NCBI RefSeq assembly: GCF_006345805.1
Contig: NC_042997.1
Span: 105,586,001-105,650,000, forward strand
Length of the DNA: 64,000 nt
Source of the DNA: Octopus sinensis
Lineage: Eukaryota
Reading direction: 5' to 3'
The notes under the pieces are model-generated. The model saw only the letters and a list, made by a program, of their open reading frames with translations. It was not told the origin of the DNA and did no database searches. Position numbers and translations under genes: made by a program. This document shows positions 5,084-51,936 of this stretch, one piece after another; positions within the stretch are counted from its first letter, which is position 1; each line of letters starts with the position of its first letter.

Positions 5084-6914
5084 TACACGTGGATAACTGA
5101 ATTTTTCATGAACCGAATAGACGGTCGATCAGTTTAAAATCCACATTTCAAACGATTTCACCTCACACCAATTCGTAAACATTAGAAGTAAAGTTGAGAA
5201 CATGTTTCATTGAACATACCCAACAAATTGTGACTTCTGTCTTCAGATGAAAAGCTTTTCATATTACTATAGTATAGGGTATAGAAGCTACAATCTCTGT
5301 TAAATGAATGAGTTCATCATTTAATGTATATTTTCATGCATTTTACTCCTTCTTCTTTGCTAGCACATCTGAGAACAGGTGCGAATGTTACACAGTCTAT
5401 TAACATTTCTATATTTTTAAATACTCGGTTTCTGTGTAAATAAAAATAAACACCCGTAATTTTTTTCTCTTAAGCAGCTTGTTCAGGTTTCTTTCAACTA
5501 TTGCAATACTCTTAAATTTAAGTTGTGAATGATACGCCATTCTGAAAAGCAGAAAACAGTGCAGACTAAGTGAAACAAATTAAAAGAAAAAAAATGAAAC
5601 TAAATACCAGAGTTAGTTTGCCTGGTCTTTACAGTATATATTATCATAACACAAATAGCTTGGCCAGTATAGCATCAGGATTCGAACATGCTAATTAGTA
5701 CACAATACAACGGATAATTGTTTATTTACCCTTCTCTAATGAAATAAGTACTGCCAGTCAATTGTTACACTTTTTCGAGAATAGATATATCATTGGATCA
5801 ATGAATAAAGCAGTAGGTTTCATGAATATGCTAAAATTATGGAATTGTGACACCTATATATATTTTCCAAGTGTACTAATGTTAATCATATATAATTATC
5901 AGAATTGTGGCACCAGATTGTGAGTTGTGTTCTCAAGTGTCACTTGAGTAAAAGTAAAAAGTGGCAAAGTGCTATTCTGCCGTCAGTTATTAGTCTGCAT
6001 GATATATTTAAAAGTTTTATATACATTATATATCGTATTTTACTTTTATAGCTTTAACAGCTAAACCAAATTCAAACTACAACTTTCATACAAATCTAAG
6101 TTACAAACCCTGTTTGTCCCTAACTTTACCTCTTATATTACGCTGCTGGCCGCTGTCTTGAATTTAACATGAAGGAAGTCTTGTTATACATAAATATTTC
6201 TAAATCGAAATTGAATAAAATGACTTAATAGCCTATTAACGGGCGCCAGTTTTAATTCTATCCTAGGCTGATACAGCTTAGCATATTTGCAAATTACTAT
6301 TAGTTTCACATAACATTTTAATTCTTAACATTCGCACAGAGACCATCAAATGAGAATAAAATTGTCAAGACATTCAACTATGCACGTTATCTAGAGCACA
6401 ATTATAGCTTTCTAATAGGAATTCTTAATAAGTGTATTCGCTAGAAAAGGCTTTTAATAGATACTGTTAATCAAGTACTGTGCAGTTATCATGTCACACA
6501 CAGTTCATGCTAATAGCTAATTAGTCAACTTACCAAGATATATGATACGTTCGCTTCTTTGATGAGTAACAATGATTACTTGATTCAGTTCCTCATTTTT
6601 GCTGTCCACCAACAAATCGTTGCTTTTCTATTTGTTCCAGTCGAGATTTATTAGTACGAAAGGAATATAATTAATAGAAGCTAATTATATACATAAGGAT
6701 ATGGGATGCAATCGTGGAATGGATAAAATTATAGCTTTCTGTATCATAGTATCTGGGATTGTGTGCTTTGGTTAAGATGCTTGTATTTAGGTAGTGGAAT
6801 AAAATTTATTTAACTTTGTTTATCAGCCACCAAATTGGGTGTTGAGGCTGCTTCATTGGAGCAACAAAATTCGGTAACGAAGAAACTGGATAATTTCCAA
6901 AGGAGGATGATTTA

Positions 6915-46381: not shown

Positions 46382-48237
46382 ATGTGTGTCTTTGTGTGTC
46401 TGTGTGTGTGTGTACGTTTTTATGTTTCTGAATATATGTAGATATATGTGTTTATATATGTCTGTCTACCTATATACATATTCATACACACACACACTCA
46501 TATATGTTTGTATATATATATATATATAAAACAAGCCTAATTATGCGTATCTGCATCACTACTTCCATATCAGATCCCCTTGGATTTACTTCTAGCCACT
46601 CTTTATGTCGTGAACCCAGTTCTGGATGAACATTTCGGAGTTGAACTTCAAATTCATTTGAGTATTACTATGTGTTTTCTATACAGAGCATATGTAGCTC
46701 TATACACAGCATATATACCTCTCATCTTATCCCTGTCCATATGTGTGTGATACAATTAATACTAAACTCCTTGTTCCTTTGTGTTTGCACCACTGATAAG
46801 TTCATACTTTAGATCGTAAAATGCAGCGGACGCCCGAATTTGTATTGAAAACCCTTGAGGCTTATTTTGTTTTTCTTTTATTTCTGGTCTATATAATTAA
46901 TAGTAAAATAGATATTGGATCGTAATATAGACAACACTCTTTCAATGCTATTAGCATTGAGTCTATGTCAGAAATGTATGCTAGTTGCAAAAATTATTGT
47001 AATTTCTTTATATTATATTTCTATACGTCGTTTTTGTATCCATATTTGTTTACATATTTAATATTTGTCTCTGCTTGAAACAAATATATCTAATACGTTA
47101 TTATTCTCGTATGATTTCTGAAGATTTCCCGCAGAGCGCTTTTGTACGGTATATAGAAGATACGTATCATTGTTAGATGATTATTATTTTCCCCTTTCAA
47201 ATTAATGCCGACTACTTATACGAAACCATATTGAGTGAAACGAATCACAAATTTCCTATGATACCCGCTACTTCTTTTCCTGATCGTCTTAAACATTGAG
47301 TGTAAAGTTATTATCCCACATGGGATTGAGAATAAGAGATTTTTTGGAACTGCCATACATGGAGTGTATGAAGAGAAAAGGCATGCTGTTAACTGTAGAC
47401 ATTAAAGGATATTATATTTATAGACTCCCATCCAAACAAACGAGGCTTTAGAGTTTATATGTTGATCTTCTCTAAGGATTTATCAAGGTTCCTCACTAAC
47501 TGTTCGTATTCAATTCCTTGTTGAACCATATCATAACTAGACATACCATACTATAACTCTCACATATTTGTGATAATGGCTACCACTAACAGTCTTAAAA
47601 GATATTTGCTGCCAGGTAAGTTCACGCTTGGTCTACCTTATGATAGCAATGACCTTCATGGACCACAAATAATCATTAGCGATATTTTCGTTTGAAATTT
47701 ATTCACCTGATCTGCATTAACAAAAAAAATTAATCCATGTTTAATTATTTTCTCTTATGCTTGCTGCAGGTAACTCTGGTTTTGTTGATTCTGGACAAAG
47801 TCAATTGATTTTATGTTAATATGTACACAACCGTTTTTACTCTGGTACATACTTTGCTATATTTCTTCATCAATAGAGTAAGAGAAAATAACACAATGGC
47901 GTTCTTGTTAAATTTAGAAGAGAAATTTAGAAATTTAGAAAAGAAAATATATACTTCAAAACATCTAGATTTCTTTTGAACTCTCGGAACAAGAAAGGTA
48001 TTCAATCTGGAAAGGAAACAAGTATAGATATTACAATCAGAATCAGATTTCTAGCCATTGTATTGAAGACTCCACTAGAGTGGACGAAAGCGCTAATGTA
48101 TGATACATGATTGATAAAAACATGTAACATACTAATAAATATCTATATCTAAATATAATACCATCTAGATTTCTGAATACCTCGTTTCTTCTAATATACA
48201 ATACCTGTACATCATCTCGAAACCTTATAATATATAT

Positions 48238-48290
<53 letters not shown>

Positions 48291-48450
48291 GCGTATTTTT
48301 GCCATTTCAATATGGCTACCCCTAAGGGTGGATGCTACTGTAGTTTTAGCCCCAGGAGGACACACTCCTCCAGCTGGCCATATACACACTATCTGTGTCC
48401 TGTCAGTATTTGCAAAGGGAAGTCATCCTTCCCGTCTTCAACTTATGATA

Positions 48451-48495
48451 CACACGGACTCGAGTTTCGAGGTATTGACCTCTCGTCAGCGTGTG
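48451..48495 (-). ncRNA. Type I hammerhead ribozyme, copy 1 (intact core)
   Basis: cacacg-CUGACGA-GAGGU(CAAU)ACCUC-GAAA-CUCGAG-UC/cgugug; predicted cut between 48457 and 48456. Confidence 0.92.
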
Positions 48496-48801
48496 ACAAT
48501 CATAGTTGTCGCCGAGAATGTAGTTTCCTTCACAAATACTTATACTTTTTCCAGCGCCCACTGTCGCTGATATTGAAAAAGTGAAATCAAACATTGATAA
48601 ATATCAAAGTGAGTTATAACAGTAGCGGTAACACATCGGGCGTATTTTTGCCATTTCAATATGGCTAACCCCTAAGGGTGGATGCTACTGTAGTTTTTAG
48701 CCCCAGGAGGACACACTCCTCCAGCTGGCCATATACACACTATCTGTGTCCTGTCAGTATTTGCAAAGGGAAGTCATCCTTCCCGTCTTCAACTTATGAT
48801 A

Positions 48802-48846
48802 CACACGGACTCGAGTTTCGAGGTATTGACCTCTCGTCAGCGTGTG
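48802..48846 (-). ncRNA. Type I hammerhead ribozyme, copy 2 (intact core)
   Basis: Identical 45-nt motif. Confidence 0.92.
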
Positions 48847-49151
48847 ACAATCATAGTTGTCGCCGAGAATAGATTTCCTTCACAAATACTTATACTTTTT
48901 CCAGCGTCCACTGTCGCTGATATTGAAAAAGTGAAATCAAACAATGATAAATATCAAAGTGAGTTATATACAGTAGCGGTAACACATCGTGGCGTATTTT
49001 TGCCATTTCACAATATGGCTAACCCTAGGGGGATGCTACTGTAGTTTTTAGCCCCAGGAGGACACACTCCTCCAGCTGGCCATATACACACTATCTGTGT
49101 CCTGTTAGTATTTGCAAAGGGAAGTCATCCTTCCCGTCTTAACTTATGATA

Positions 49152-49195
49152 CACACGGACTCGAGTTCGAGGTATTGACCTCTCGTCAGCGTGTG
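49152..49195 (-). ncRNA. Type I hammerhead, copy 3 (GAAA reads GAA)
   Basis: Plus reads gagttcgagg instead of gagtttcgagg; 1-nt homopolymer loss may be a sequencing error. Confidence 0.75.
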
Positions 49196-49502
49196 ACAAT
49201 CATAGTTGTCGCCGAGAATTAGATTTCCTTCACAAATACTTATACTTTTTCCAGCGCCACTGTCGCTGATATTGAAAAAGTGAAATCAAACAATGATAAA
49301 TATCAAAGTGAGGTTATATACAGTAGCGGTAACACATCGTGGCGTATTTTTGCCATTTCAATATGGCTAACCCCTAAGGGTGGATGCTACTGTAGTTTTT
49401 AGCCCCAGGAGGACACACTCCTCCAGCTGGCCATATACACACTATCTGTGTCCTGTCAGTATTTGCAAGGGAAGTCATCCTTCCCGTCTTCAACTTATGA
49501 TA

Positions 49503-49547
49503 CACACGGACTCGAGTTTCGAGGTATTGACCTCTCGTCAGCGTGTG
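49503..49547 (-). ncRNA. Type I hammerhead ribozyme, copy 4 (intact core)
   Basis: Identical 45-nt motif. Confidence 0.92.
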
Positions 49548-49858
49548 ACAATCATAGTTGTCGCCGAGAATTAGATTTCCTTCACAAATACTTATACTTT
49601 TTCCAGCGCCCACTGTCGTCACTGATATTGAAAAAGTGAAATCAAACAATGATAAATATCAAAGTGAGTTATATACAGTAGCGGTAACACATCGTGGCGT
49701 ATTTTTGCCATTTCAATATGGCTAACCGCTAAGGGTGGATGCTACTGTAGTTTTTAGCCCCAGGAGGACACACTCCTCCAGCTGGCCATATACACACTAT
49801 CTGTGACCTGTTAGTATTTGCAAAGGGAAGTCATCCTTCCCGTCTTCAACTTATGATA

Positions 49859-49903
49859 CACACGGACTCGAGTTTCGAGGTATTGACCTCTCGTCAGCGT
49901 GTG
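49859..49903 (-). ncRNA. Type I hammerhead ribozyme, copy 5 (intact core)
   Basis: Identical 45-nt motif. Confidence 0.92.
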
Positions 49904-50211
49904 ACAATCATAGTTGTCGCCGAGAATTAGATTTCCTTCACAAATACTTATACTTTTTCCAGCGCCCACTGTCGCTGATATTGAAAAAGTGAAATCAAAC
50001 AATGATAAATATCAAAGTGAGTTATATACAGTAGCGGTAACACATCGTGGCGTATTTTTGCCATTTCAATATGGCTAACCCCTAAGGGTGGATGCTACTG
50101 TAGTTTTTAGCCCCAGGAGGACACACTCCTCCAGCTGGCCATATACACACTATCTGTGTCCTGTCAGTATTTGCAAAGGGAAGTCATCCTTCCCGTCTTC
50201 AACTTATGATA

Positions 50212-50256
50212 CACACGGACTCGAGTTTCGAGGTATTGACCTCTCGTCAGCGTGTG
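50212..50256 (-). ncRNA. Type I hammerhead ribozyme, copy 6 (intact core)
   Basis: Identical 45-nt motif; cut between 50218 and 50217. Confidence 0.92.
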
Positions 50257-50564
50257 ACAATCATAGTTGTCGCCGAGAATTAGATTTCCTTCACAAATAC
50301 TTATACTTTTTCCAGCGCCCACTGTCGCTGATATTGAAAAAGTGAAATCAAACAATGATAAATATCAAAGTGAGTTATATACAGTAGCGGTAACACATCG
50401 CGGCGTATTTTTGCCATTTCAATATGGCTAACCCCTAAGGGTGGATGCTACTGTAGTTTTTAGCCCCAGGAGGACACACTCCTCCAGCTGGCCATATACA
50501 CACTATCTGTGTCCTGTTAGTATTTGCAAAGGGAAGTCATCCTTCCCGTCTTCAACTTATGATA

Positions 50565-50609
50565 CACACGGACTCGAGTTTCGAGGTATTGACCTCTCGT
50601 CAGCGTGTG
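50565..50609 (-). ncRNA. Type I hammerhead ribozyme, copy 7 (intact core)
   Basis: Identical 45-nt motif; cut between 50571 and 50570. Confidence 0.92.
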
Positions 50610-50792
50610 ACAATCATAGTTGTCGCCGAGAATTAGATTTCCTTCACAAATACTTATACTTTTTCCAGCGCCCACTGTCGCTGATATTGAAAAAGTGAAA
50701 TCAAACAATGATAAATATCAAAGTGAGTTATATACAGTAGCGGTAACACATCGTGGCGTATTTTTGCCATTTCAATATGGCTAACCCCTAAT

Positions 50793-50960
50793 ATATATAT
50801 ATACGACGGGCTTCTTTCAGTTTCCGTCCCTCAAATCCACTCACAAGGCTTTGGTCGAACCGAGGCTATAGGAGAGGCCAGTTGCCCAAGGTACCACACA
50901 GTCAGACTGAACCCAGAACCAAGAGGTTGGTAAGCAAACTACTTACCACACAGCCACGGG
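50793..50960 (-). mobile_element. 5' half of the long tRNA-derived SINE
   Basis: Minus: cccgtggctgtgtggtaagtag..gggttcagtc..gaaagaagcccgtcgtatata. Confidence 0.85.
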
Positions 50961-51057
50961 AAATATAGTTTCGGTTTACAAAAAAATCGAGTAATGATAG
51001 GCATTCAGGAAAGAATTAAATTCATAATACGAGCTCCCACTGTAATTCATATAGATA

Positions 51058-51440
51058 ATGTGCTCGAGACCTTTTGTGGTATTCGAAATAGTTTGCAGCA
51101 AATGTAGAGTATCCTACATTGTGACCATCACCAAGAATCTTCATGTGCGAATCCAGGAACACATGTGCAAACATGCAACCAGAAAAAAGCCAGACCCAAG
51201 ATTTCAAGTAATCCATCAAGGCCTCTCAGTGCAACAGAAACGATCTCGGAGTCATGGAAGAACTCTTTATCAACAAACTGAGACCAGCTAAAACTAACAG
51301 AGAAGAGTTACATAAAGCATACTGGTTACTATATGTCTCATCTCCACTTGTTCTAGTCTTATCCAACAAGTCTCTGTCCGACGAACGGGAACGTGAAACT
51401 CAGAGTAACAGGTTTTGTTGAATTTCTGCTGCTTTTAAAT

Positions 51441-51445
<5 letters not shown>
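51058..51445 (+). mobile_element. Penelope-like element 3' end: GIY-YIG endonuclease remnant plus decayed hammerhead (51374-51411)
   Basis: VVFEIVCSKCRVSYIVTITKNLHVRIQEH, then frameshifted LGVMEELFINKLRP..NREE; downstream ctgt-CCGACGA-acg(ggaa)cgt-GAAA-ctcagag-TA-acag. Confidence 0.85.
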
Positions 51446-51474
<29 letters not shown>

Positions 51475-51477
<3 letters not shown>

Positions 51478-51936
51478 TATTCCCTCGCCATATCACTGTT
51501 CACCTTTCGCGCACTCAATACATCGCGGATTTTCCTGGCTAATATATGTATATTTATATCGTGGACACTTCAGTACACCGCGGGTTTCTGCGAAGCATTT
51601 TCACGCCTGGAAAATTGATAAATGAATGACTAAAATTACAGTACTGCGCTATAACACTTTAAGTAAAACACTTTATATTATAACATTTTAAGTAAAATAT
51701 ATTAAAAGATAGTACTTAGTGTACCGTAGATGAGTAAACAGAGACTCGCACATACTGTATGGAAAACGAAACTCAGGAAGCGAATGTGTGGTGCTGTTTT
51801 GCATTTATAATAAAATAAATATATACAAATTATAAAAATAATAAAACATTTATACAGTACGGTTTCTACTTCGTGGGTTTTCACCTGTTGCGGGAGGTCT
51901 TGGAACGAAACACCCGCGATAGTCGAGGGTTTACCG
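51475..51936. mobile_element. Tigger/pogo-like MITE
   Basis: TA-cagtattccctcgccatatc ... cgcgatagtcgagggtttaccg; imperfect TIRs; sits in (TA)n. Confidence 0.75.

What the first reader, a model, noticed from the sequence alone, without database searches (positions are those of the whole stretch)
48288..50791. Hammerhead-ribozyme tandem array: candidate cephalopod retrozyme / circular RNA system
Seen: 7.1 near-identical ~353-bp units. On the minus strand each reads cacacg-CUGACGA-GAGGU(CAAU)ACCUC-GAAA-C(UCGA)G-UC/cgugug. All invariant core positions are present (C3 U4 G5 A6 G8 A9 G12 A13 A14, A15.1-U16.1, G10.1-C11.1, GUC triplet), stems I and II pair perfectly, and 6 of 7 copies are intact. 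No ORF is conserved across units. Known: tandem monomers of a few hundred bp with one type I hammerhead each define newt satellite 2, Schistosoma Sm-alpha, cricket pDo500 and the metazoan non-LTR retrozymes, whose transcripts self-cleave and circularise. Inference: read-through transcription yields 353-nt monomers (e.g. 50570 to 50218) that may be ligated into circles and retro-inserted by a helper RT. I cannot tell whether this family is already described.
Basis: partly seen in the sequence, partly recalled or inferred. Interest (0 to 1): 0.95.

Follow-up and report, generated by a model that had tools for sequence, protein, structure and literature searches.

The report
Hammerhead-ribozyme retrozyme array in (TA)n
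This 2.5-kb repeat is one insertion of a young, genome-wide family of tiny non-coding mobile elements; each 353-base unit carries a hammerhead self-cutting RNA motif, so it is a new example of the known animal "retrozymes", and its insertion scars match those left by Penelope-like retrotransposons.

Summary
Window 48288-50791 holds 7.1 tandem units of 353 bp. On the minus strand there are six intact type I hammerhead motifs and a seventh that lacks one A of GAAA.

Rfam Hammerhead_1 matches at 32.2 bits (E 2e-5), just under its curated cut-off of 34 bits.

The array is not a local satellite. The genome holds 783 copies of this hammerhead, spread over all large contigs and about 1% diverged.

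In 31 complete insertions:
- the hammerhead-sense 3' end is fixed, at unit position ~172-175 or ~217-220;
- the 5' end is truncated at variable positions;
- 25 insertions have (TA)n directly at both ends;
- 16 are head-to-head inverted pairs, and in each pair only one arm carries the extra ~45-nt "tail".

These are the published hallmarks of Penelope-like element (PLE) integration. Intact (TA)n-flanked PLEs of Neptune-type domain layout (reverse transcriptase (RT) plus GIY-YIG endonuclease) are present in the same genome.

So the retrozyme reading is supported and extended. Self-cleavage, transcription and circles remain untested, because only contigs of public runs were available.

This is a new member of a known kind. 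Earlier notes of this scan describe other retrozyme families in the same genome, with the same PLE reading.

The parts
48288..50791 (-). Single-armed retrozyme insertion: 7.1 tandem units of 353 bp. The 5' end is truncated at unit position 133 (window 50791). The 3' end is at unit position ~172 (window 48288, ...AUACGCCAC).
   Evidence: TRF; unit mapping; no inverted partner
50565..50609 (-). Type I hammerhead motif, intact; cleavage predicted between 50571 and 50570
   Evidence: Rfam RF00163 32.2 bits, E 2e-5; pattern match
50212..50256 (-). Type I hammerhead motif, intact
49859..49903 (-). Type I hammerhead motif, intact
49503..49547 (-). Type I hammerhead motif, intact
49152..49195 (-). Hammerhead copy lacking one A of the GAAA run (G12-A15.1). 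It is either inactive or a homopolymer assembly error.
   Evidence: sequence; unit alignment, position 343 gap in unit 49508-49158
48802..48846 (-). Type I hammerhead motif, intact
48451..48495 (-). Type I hammerhead motif, intact
48226..48287 (.). (TA)32 microsatellite abutting the element's 3' end; this is the target site
   Evidence: TRF; flank listing
50792..50800 (.). Short (TA)n remnant abutting the truncated 5' end; other half of the target microsatellite
   Evidence: sequence; flank listing
50801..50957 (-). Neighbouring 157-bp SINE-like repeat whose 3' end meets the same (TA)n; not part of the retrozyme
   Evidence: own-genome search, at least 5002 candidates
48063..48225 (.). Neighbouring ~163-bp dispersed repeat on the other side of the (TA)n; not part of the retrozyme
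   Evidence: own-genome search, at least 1905 candidates

Best explanation
The array is one recent insertion of a non-autonomous retroelement of the animal non-LTR retrozyme class.

Proposed cycle:
1. The minus strand (hammerhead-sense) is transcribed.
2. The type I hammerhead in each unit cuts the multimer into 353-nt monomers. It could act as a single motif or as a double hammerhead through the palindromic stem III.
3. Monomers, or occasionally dimers, are ligated into highly self-paired circles.
4. A Penelope-like element (PLE) supplies a reverse transcriptase (RT) and a GIY-YIG endonuclease. The endonuclease nicks a (TA)n microsatellite. The RT copies the RNA from a fixed entry site (unit position ~172-175) round and round, producing a tandem cDNA that stops at a variable 5' point.
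5. In about half of the events the second DNA end also primes, from a site ~45 nt further 3' (position ~217-220). This gives a head-to-head inverted arm with a one-sided 'tail'.

Shown here:
- the motif and the dispersed young family;
- the polarity of truncation and the two classes of 3' end;
- the (TA)n target and the inverted arms;
- the presence of intact (TA)n-flanked PLEs in the same genome.

Inferred, not shown: transcription, cleavage, circularity of the template, and which PLE is the helper.
For: Motif:
- Six full-model matches to RF00163, E 2e-5.
- 6 pattern matches against 0 in shuffles.
- The core is invariant, and variation sits at N7, loop 2 and wobble-compatible stem positions, across this family, an old 84-89% copy and three sister loci (one only 68% alike over unit positions 185-346, the other two alignable only across the hammerhead).

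RNA shape: the monomer folds at -116.6 kcal/mol, z = -6.4.

Family:
- 783 copies within 2 mismatches (393 forward, 390 reverse; control 0).
- At least 1467 candidate places for the unit.
- Pairwise distance 0.95% within arrays and 0.96% between loci.

Insertion scars in 31 complete insertions (raw data):
- 25 have (TA)n at both ends and 5 at one end, while (TA)>=4 covers only 4.1% of the window.
- 14 of 15 single arms end at ~172-174.
- All 16 two-armed insertions have one arm ending at ~174-178. The other ends at 216-224 in 14; in the last two a short piece reaches only position 210 or 191 within the tail region.
- 5' ends are variable.
- Arms join with 0-10 nt of overlap.

Template: substitution variants are array-specific and shared by all units, and by both arms where informative.

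Literature (PMC8557442): PLE insertions are partial tandems with an adjacent inverted 5'-truncated copy, a 30-40 bp tail at one end only, and a microsatellite bias, (TA)n for Hydra and Naiad. The CX2-5CxxC linker is linked to that bias in Neptune.

Helper candidates:
- PLEs with 775-883 aa open frames carry RVT_1 plus a C-terminal GIY-YIG, a CX4CxxC linker and CCHH.
- They are flanked by (TA)n.
- The three of them that came up as one search hits share a 31.4-bit GIY-YIG match with many other loci, eight of which have a 781-aa open frame.
Against: - No RNA evidence. No holder run is on record as RNA, only contigs were served, and the small 'RNA?' run that holds the unit could equally be low-coverage DNA of a multi-copy repeat.
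- The Rfam score is below the curated cut-off (32.2 against 34).
- In nearest-neighbour folding, the hammerhead fold of the 71-nt context (-18.3 kcal/mol) is less stable than an alternative rod (-24.2).
- There is no compensatory covariation: 0 double changes in 13 pairs across 5 sequences.
- Within the young family the hammerhead is no less variable than the rest of the unit (0.0073 against 0.0084 differences per site). Selection on the motif is therefore seen only in the comparison with sister families.
- None of the 17 PLE loci sampled shares nucleotide similarity with the unit, so the helper is named by scars, not by homology.
- A circular template is not distinguishable here from an uncleaved linear multimer.
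Confidence: 0.78

Rival explanations
1. The same retroelement, but the template is an uncleaved linear read-through multimer from a donor array. The hammerhead would then be a passenger or relic that plays no part in mobilisation.
For: Circles were not observed. The hammerhead is not the predicted minimum-energy fold. Naiad PLEs proliferate without hammerheads (PMC8557442). Position 53 alternates A,G,A,G,A,G,G along the window array, which a copied heterogeneous array could also give.
Against: Arrays are otherwise internally homogeneous for their private variants, as expected from a one-unit template. The hammerhead core is fully conserved in sister loci: one is only 68% alike over 160 nt and two align only across the hammerhead. 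Related animal retrozymes were shown experimentally to cleave and circularise (PMC7229834).
Confidence: 0.12
2. The arrays are 5'-truncated copies (pseudo-LTR pieces) of a longer autonomous Penelope-like element, not an independent 353-nt element.
For: PLE terminal repeats carry hammerheads, and most PLE copies are 5'-truncated (PMC8557442; 10.64898/2026.07.22.740005). An old copy of the unit lies head-to-head next to a PLE 5' end in L046.
Against: Up to 7 consecutive 353-bp units occur with no coding sequence between them. None of the ~33 loci examined continues into an RT ORF. 17 PLE loci show no similarity to the unit. In L046 a (TA)10 run separates the two elements, so they look like separate hits on one microsatellite.
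Confidence: 0.05
3. An ordinary satellite or minisatellite spread and expanded at the DNA level (unequal crossover, eccDNA reinsertion, rolling-circle DNA copying), with a fortuitous or fossil hammerhead.
For: It has tandem structure, and local expansion by unequal exchange cannot be excluded for long arrays. The dimer-period variant at position 53 is what unequal exchange of dimers gives.
Against: There are hundreds of dispersed short insertions (many only 1.2-2 units) with the same two 3' termini, a strand-specific truncation polarity, (TA)n targets and heterotypic inverted arms. Unequal crossover does not disperse copies or create defined termini.
Confidence: 0.03
4. A SINE-like element mobilised by a LINE (L1/Tx1/RTE/CR1 type) and not by a PLE.
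For: LINEs are abundant in this genome according to earlier notes of the scan (unchecked). Twin priming by L1 can also give inversions.
Against: There is no poly(A) or LINE-type 3' tail. The target is (TA)n. Tandem multimers and a one-sided ~45-nt tail are PLE marks, not LINE marks (PMC8557442).
Confidence: 0.02

Closest known systems
Metazoan non-LTR retrozymes (Cervera & de la Pena 2020, PMC7229834): coral, mussel and axolotl tandem repeats with type I hammerheads
   Same: Tandem units of 150-450 bp, one type I hammerhead per unit, GC below 45-50% (here 42.8%), no ORF, no LTR/PBS/PPT, dispersed multi-copy, strongly self-paired monomer RNA. Stem III of 2 bp plus a tetraloop is 'similar to invertebrate HHRs' in that paper.
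   Different: The sequence is unrelated to the described families as far as I could test. No cephalopod is mentioned in that paper or its supplement. Here the integration marks (fixed 3' entry sites, (TA)n target, heterotypic inverted arms) are readable, whereas that paper only notes TSDs 'larger than 4 bp when present'. Expression as circRNA was shown there and not here.
Penelope-like elements, C-terminal EN+ clades (Neptune, Hydra, Penelope/Poseidon; Craig et al. 2021, PMC8557442)
   Same: Insertion architecture: partial tandems, an adjacent inverted 5'-truncated copy, a tail at one end only, microsatellite (TA)n bias, and a hammerhead near the 3' end.
   Different: The unit encodes nothing and is ten times shorter. 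The tail is ~45 nt rather than 30-40 bp. No nucleotide similarity was found to the PLEs sampled in this genome. The hammerhead-like motif of the sampled Neptune-type PLE has U3/A8 instead of C3/G8.
Vertebrate non-LTR retrozymes as PLE derivatives (Li, Clavereau & Pollet 2026, bioRxiv 10.64898/2026.07.22.740005)
   Same: The same hypothesis: non-autonomous elements that use PLE machinery and co-occur with PLEs.
   Different: Their evidence is co-distribution and sequence similarity to Xenopus pLTRs. Here the evidence is integration scars, with no detectable sequence similarity. Invertebrates were explicitly left open in that work.
Newt satellite 2, Schistosoma Sm-alpha, cave-cricket pDo500
   Same: A few-hundred-bp tandem monomers with a type I hammerhead and a short stem III, which can act through a double-hammerhead dimer (established knowledge). 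Here ACUCGAGU is self-complementary, with a duplex energy of -12.1 kcal/mol.
   Different: A different host phylum and sequence. These classical cases were described as satellites or SINE-like repeats before the retrozyme concept.
Plant LTR retrozymes (PMC4918200)
   Same: Non-autonomous, hammerhead-delimited, circRNA intermediates.
   Different: The plant elements have type III hammerheads in LTRs, PBS/PPT, 4-bp TSDs and Gypsy helpers. None of these applies here.

Membership tests
Hammerhead ribozyme, type I (Rfam RF00163) | Conserved core: C3 U4 G5 A6 N7 G8 A9, G12 A13 A14, A15.1-U16.1, cleavage triplet NUH | tested here: met
   Sequence; 6 pattern matches against 0 in shuffles; core invariant across 5 related sequences
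Hammerhead ribozyme, type I (Rfam RF00163) | Three helices around the core with the open end in stem I | tested here: met
   Full-model alignment 1-45. Stem I 6 bp, then an internal loop and further pairing; stem II 5 bp; stem III 2 bp plus tetraloop. 95.4% of cells paired
Hammerhead ribozyme, type I (Rfam RF00163) | Score at or above Rfam's curated gathering threshold (34 bits) | tested here: not met
   32.2 bits, E 2e-5; no hit at the gathering threshold. The shortfall is 1.8 bits and comes from stem II and loop letters, not from the core
Hammerhead ribozyme, type I (Rfam RF00163) | Compensatory covariation in the helices | tested here: inconclusive
   0 double changes, 3 one-sided wobble-compatible changes; only 5 distinct, closely related sequences
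Hammerhead ribozyme, type I (Rfam RF00163) | Site-specific self-cleavage | not testable with these tools
   Needs in vitro transcription. The predicted hammerhead fold is 5.9 kcal/mol above the MFE of the 71-nt context
Metazoan non-LTR retrozymes | Short tandem repeats (150-450 bp), each with one type I hammerhead, from dimers to multimers | tested here: met
   Period 353, 7.1 copies; other loci have 1.2 to more than 6 units
Metazoan non-LTR retrozymes | Dispersed multi-copy family, i.e. mobile and not a single satellite block | tested here: met
   783 hammerhead copies on all large contigs; at least 1467 candidate places
Metazoan non-LTR retrozymes | Non-coding, low GC, no LTR/PBS/PPT | tested here: met
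   Longest ORF 98 aa, none conserved; GC 42.8%; the unit is the whole element and there are no terminal repeats beyond the tandem
Metazoan non-LTR retrozymes | Highly self-paired monomer RNA | tested here: met
   -116.6 kcal/mol, z = -6.4, 0 of 100 shuffles as stable
Metazoan non-LTR retrozymes | Expressed as linear and circular unit-length RNA | tested here: inconclusive
   No holder run is on record as RNA. Contigs of a small 'RNA?' run cover parts of the unit but not the unique flank, which low-coverage DNA would also give
PLE-mobilised non-autonomous element | PLE-type integration marks: microsatellite target, partial tandem, inverted 5'-truncated arm, one-sided tail | tested here: met
   25/31 with (TA)n at both ends. 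All 16 two-armed insertions have one arm ending at ~174-178; the other ends at 216-224 in 14, and in 2 a short piece reaches 210 or 191. 14/15 single arms end at ~172-174. Compared with the description in PMC8557442
PLE-mobilised non-autonomous element | Sequence homology of the unit to a PLE terminal region (pLTR), as in Xenopus | tested here: not met
   No significant blastn match to 17 PLE loci. Only a small sample of more than 5000 GIY-YIG candidates was examined
PLE-mobilised non-autonomous element | Potentially active helper PLE in the same genome | tested here: met
   Open frames of 775-883 aa with RVT_1 plus GIY-YIG, a CX4CxxC linker and CCHH, (TA)n flanks, and many loci with the same 31.4-bit GIY-YIG match, eight of them with a 781-aa open frame

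The most novel reading that the evidence does not exclude
The family would be a natural read-out of how Penelope-like reverse transcriptases integrate. Both DNA ends of a staggered break in (TA)n would prime on the same small circular RNA, monomeric or sometimes dimeric, at two fixed entry sites ~45 nt apart. That would explain the long-unexplained one-sided 'tail' and the inverted arms of PLE insertions. It would also give the first scar-based demonstration of a retrozyme-PLE partnership in an invertebrate where no sequence similarity to the helper remains.
Probability: 0.3. Interest if true: 0.6.

Novelty: new member of a known kind. Interest (0 to 1): 0.45.

Why it matters
Retrozymes are the only known genome-encoded route to ribozyme-made circular RNAs in animals. 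How they are copied back into DNA has been a proposal, not an observation.

This family is young (about 1% divergence), short, and present in hundreds of independent insertions. Its termini can therefore be read base by base.

What the termini show:
- Truncation polarity identifies the hammerhead-sense RNA as the template.
- The (TA)n target, the two fixed 3' entry sites and the strictly heterotypic inverted arms reproduce the peculiar architecture of Penelope-like element insertions.

This gives cephalopod genomics a named repeat class. In the small sample looked at here, other short repeats also sat at TA microsatellites. It also gives PLE biology a compact 353-nt substrate for testing integration models.

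It does not change the concept. The class and the PLE hypothesis are already published.

Tried and rejected
1. Rfam at the gathering threshold over the whole window: no hit. The motif appears only with the E-value threshold.

2. Search for the helper by homology. blastn of the unit against 12 GIY-YIG loci and five 10-kb PLE loci found nothing. The one exception is an unrelated old retrozyme fragment beside a PLE in L046. A 14/16-nt resemblance between the reverse complement of the retrozyme 3' end and a PLE 3' region was judged likely chance.

3. Rfam on the PLE loci gave only spurious microRNA-like hits on TA/TG microsatellites and no hammerhead.

4. Selection test within the family: the hammerhead and the rest of the unit are equally variable. 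The family is too young for this test.

5. Covariation: none.

6. Expression: two run searches found no holder on record as RNA.

7. Empty-site or polymorphism test by laying contigs of three DNA runs and one 'RNA?' run on 47400-51600 (4201 letters, within the operators' limit). The unique flanks are present in the DNA runs of three coded organisms. However, all contigs break at the flanking repeats, so neither the filled nor an empty site is bridged. Depth figures cannot separate RNA from low-coverage DNA.

The 11 last loci on contig 1 served as the position-ordered sample.

9. tRNA-like origin of the flanking repeats: ARAGORN found nothing.

10. A candidate hammerhead in PLE locus L034 (minus strand, ~830-867) was rejected: it has G at position 17 and U-U at 10.1/11.1.
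Full report
**Observation**

Tandem Repeats Finder reports a single array at window 48288-50791 with period 353, 7.1 copies and 97% matches.

On the minus strand each unit contains:
- stem I CACACG / CGUGUG;
- the core CUGACGA;
- stem II GAGGU-CAAU-ACCUC;
- GAAA;
- a 2-bp stem III closed by UCGA;
- the GUC cleavage triplet.

A degenerate hammerhead pattern matches six times in the 64-kb window and never in 100 dinucleotide-preserving shuffles.

The seventh copy (about 49152-49195) lacks one A of the GAAA run. Many differences between units of this array are single-base indels in homopolymers, so some may be assembly errors.

Rfam's Hammerhead_1 model aligns end to end with all six intact copies at 32.2 bits, E 2e-5. 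That is 1.8 bits below the curated gathering score, so the default search reports nothing.

No ORF longer than 98 aa exists, and none is kept between units. GC is 42-44%.

**RNA properties (predicted only)**

The 353-nt monomer, taken from cleavage site to cleavage site, folds into a long self-paired structure of -116.6 kcal/mol, 6.4 sd better than shuffles.

Stem I continues beyond its six pairs, through a small internal loop, into further pairing.

Two caveats apply:
- In nearest-neighbour energy terms, the hammerhead fold of the 71-nt context (-18.3 kcal/mol) is less stable than an alternative rod (-24.2).
- Stem III is short. The stretch ACUCGAGU is a perfect palindrome with a self-duplex energy of -12.1 kcal/mol, so the double-hammerhead mode known from newt and Schistosoma repeats is available. 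That comparison is established knowledge, not tested here.

**A dispersed, young family**

The window lies on contig 1 of a 2.72-Gb assembly of 13,516 contigs. The species is coded.

- The exact 33-nt hammerhead, allowing 2 mismatches, occurs 783 times (393 forward, 390 reverse). The reversed-pattern control gives 0. Copies lie on all large contigs.
- The unit has at least 1467 candidate places.
- About half of all canonical type I pattern matches in the genome (1574 against 52 in the control) belong to this family.
- In 51 full units from 21 loci, the mean pairwise distance is 0.95% within an array arm and 0.96% between loci. This is a recent burst.

**Insertion anatomy**

I mapped the unit onto 20 score-selected loci, the window, and 11 loci taken in positional order from contig 1. 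I then tallied the 31 insertions that are complete within the fetched DNA.

1. In hammerhead-sense orientation the 3' end is fixed. It lies at unit position ~172-175 (...ACGUCAC or ...CACGAU) or at ~216-224 (...UCAUUGU). The 5' end is truncated anywhere in the unit.
2. 25 of 31 insertions have (TA)n directly at both ends and 5 at one end. (TA)4-or-longer covers only 4.1% of the window.
3. 15 insertions are single arrays. 14 of them, including the window's, end at ~172-174.
4. 16 insertions are head-to-head pairs whose truncated 5' ends meet in the middle with 0-10 nt of overlap.
5. In all 16 pairs one arm ends at ~174-178. In 14 the other ends at 216-224; in the remaining two a short piece reaches only position 210 or 191 of the tail region.

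An extra ~45 nt "tail" is thus present at one end only. If arms chose their ends independently, 16 of 16 heterotypic pairs would have a probability of at most 0.5^16.

Substitution variants are array-specific and shared by all units of an array, and by both arms where informative (L019, L026). The window's array has two private variants (positions 74 and 168) in every unit.

**What this means**

A fixed 3' end with variable 5' truncation is the signature of target-primed reverse transcription. Its polarity shows that the hammerhead-sense RNA is the template.

Arrays run seamlessly through the cleavage site, and their ends do not coincide with it. The template was therefore either a circle copied round and round or an uncleaved multimer. 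The internal homogeneity of arrays favours a one-unit template.

The remaining marks match the description of Penelope-like element (PLE) insertions in Craig et al. 2021 (PMC8557442):
- partial tandems;
- an adjacent inverted 5'-truncated copy;
- a one-sided tail;
- a microsatellite target.

That paper also records (TA)n as the preferred target of the Hydra and Naiad clades, and links the CX2-5CxxC linker to microsatellite bias in Neptune.

**Candidate helpers**

The genome has more than 5000 GIY-YIG candidates. Five 10-kb loci contain open frames of 762-883 aa.

- Pfam, run on three of these frames (775-883 aa), finds RVT_1 followed by a C-terminal GIY-YIG in each.
- The one translated in full also has a CX4CxxC linker and an internal CCHH. 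This is a Neptune-type layout by the criteria of PMC8557442.
- These elements end in ...ACAAA followed by (TA)n.
- Many loci share the same 31.4-bit GIY-YIG match, eight of them with a 781-aa open frame.
- Two of these loci (L043, L038) carry, 65-100 nt from the 3' end, a hammerhead-like motif with U3/A8 in place of C3/G8 and a palindromic ACAUGU stem III.

No nucleotide similarity to the retrozyme was found in 17 PLE loci. The helper is thus indicated by scars and co-occurrence, not by homology.

**Conservation of the ribozyme**

Three sister loci have ~359-bp spacing between hammerheads. Two of them have (TA)n nearby, and all three contain inverted copies. One is only 68% alike over 160 nt; the other two align only across the hammerhead.

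They keep every core nucleotide. Differences lie at N7, loop 2, the interior of stem III, and two wobble-compatible stem I positions. An old 84-89% copy behaves likewise. There are no compensatory double changes. Within the young family the motif is as variable as the rest of the unit.

Constraint on the hammerhead is therefore suggested by the between-family comparison only.

**RNA evidence**

Two run searches found 20 and 13 holders, none on record as RNA.

I laid contigs of three DNA-type runs and one small "RNA?" run on 47400-51600.
- The unique flanks are present, with 0-3 differences, in runs of three coded organisms.
- The family is abundant in all of them.
- Every contig breaks at the flanking repeats, so neither the array nor an empty site is bridged.
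- The small run covers parts of the unit at depths of 120-197 and none of the unique flank. Low-coverage DNA of a 783-copy repeat would give the same picture.

Expression, cleavage and circularity are therefore untested.

**Comparison with the known**

The element meets all DNA-level criteria of the metazoan non-LTR retrozymes of Cervera and de la Pena 2020 (PMC7229834). Those authors demonstrated cleavage and circRNAs in a coral, a mussel and the axolotl, and proposed a non-LTR helper such as PLEs. Li et al. 2026 (bioRxiv 10.64898/2026.07.22.740005) argue from co-distribution and pLTR similarity in vertebrates that retrozymes are PLE derivatives. They leave invertebrates open.

I found no paper in the searchable library that links hammerheads or retrozymes with octopus or cephalopods. 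Subscription literature, Dfam and Repbase could not be searched.

Earlier notes of this scan (AI notes, unchecked) report other retrozyme families (about 360 and 483-495 bp) in the same genome, with the same PLE reading. They also report Hydra-clade PLEs. My PLE reading was reached, before I consulted them.

**Verdict**

This is a real feature and a correct first reading. It is a new member of a known kind. What it adds is the clarity of the integration scars.

Interest is moderate (0.45). A specialist would expect such elements in a mollusc. The strict two-terminus and heterotypic-arm rule, and the possible dimer-period template, are useful handles on PLE integration. In the window's array, position 53 reads A,G,A,G,A,G,G along successive units.

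Noticed in passing
window 50801-50957: 157-bp SINE-like repeat (at least 5002 candidate places in the genome) whose 3' end abuts (TA)n. Elsewhere it also occurs as close inverted pairs next to TA runs, so it may use the same integration route as the retrozyme. ARAGORN sees no tRNA in it.
   Followed up: partly
window 48063-48225: ~163-bp dispersed repeat (at least 1905 candidate places) on the other side of the same (TA)n. It is also found as inverted pairs elsewhere. Three different short repeats have therefore landed in one microsatellite.
   Followed up: partly
window 48288-50791, unit position 53: One variant alternates A,G,A,G,A,G,G along successive units, while all other private variants are uniform. 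This two-unit period could reflect a dimeric (706-nt) template or unequal exchange of dimers.
   Followed up: partly
L043 3753-6092 (ORF) and 6663-6699; also L038 2362-2398: A Neptune-type Penelope-like element family (RT, CX4CxxC linker, GIY-YIG with CCHH; upstream ORF of ~300 aa) flanked by (TA)n. It carries a hammerhead-like motif with the paired core change U3/A8 and a palindromic ACAUGU stem III. Rfam does not detect the motif.
   Followed up: partly
L059 1060-1801, L060 1038-1292, L061 1028-1389: Sister retrozyme loci with about 359 bp between hammerheads. The core and stem II base are the same, but stem III is the loop-less palindrome ACCGGU. All three contain inverted copies; (TA)n runs lie nearby in two (L059, L060).
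   Followed up: partly
L034 2621-2678 (+) and L044 1498-1544 (-): Two further hammerhead motifs of other families. The L034 one has the same ACUCGAGU stem III as the 353-bp family but a 39-nt stem II. The L044 one has stem III ACAGCUGU.
   Followed up: no
L046 7948-8272: An old (84-89% identical) fragment of the 353-bp unit, ending at position 220. It lies head-to-head with the 5' end of a Penelope-like element, with (TA)10 plus 12 nt between them. Most likely these are two separate hits on one microsatellite, but a hybrid integration cannot be excluded.
   Followed up: partly
window 48220-48371; L043-L047 TA/TG microsatellites: Permissive Rfam searches give microRNA-like and pestivirus-UTR-like hits on TA/TG microsatellites, all far below gathering scores. 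These are low-complexity artefacts.
   Followed up: yes
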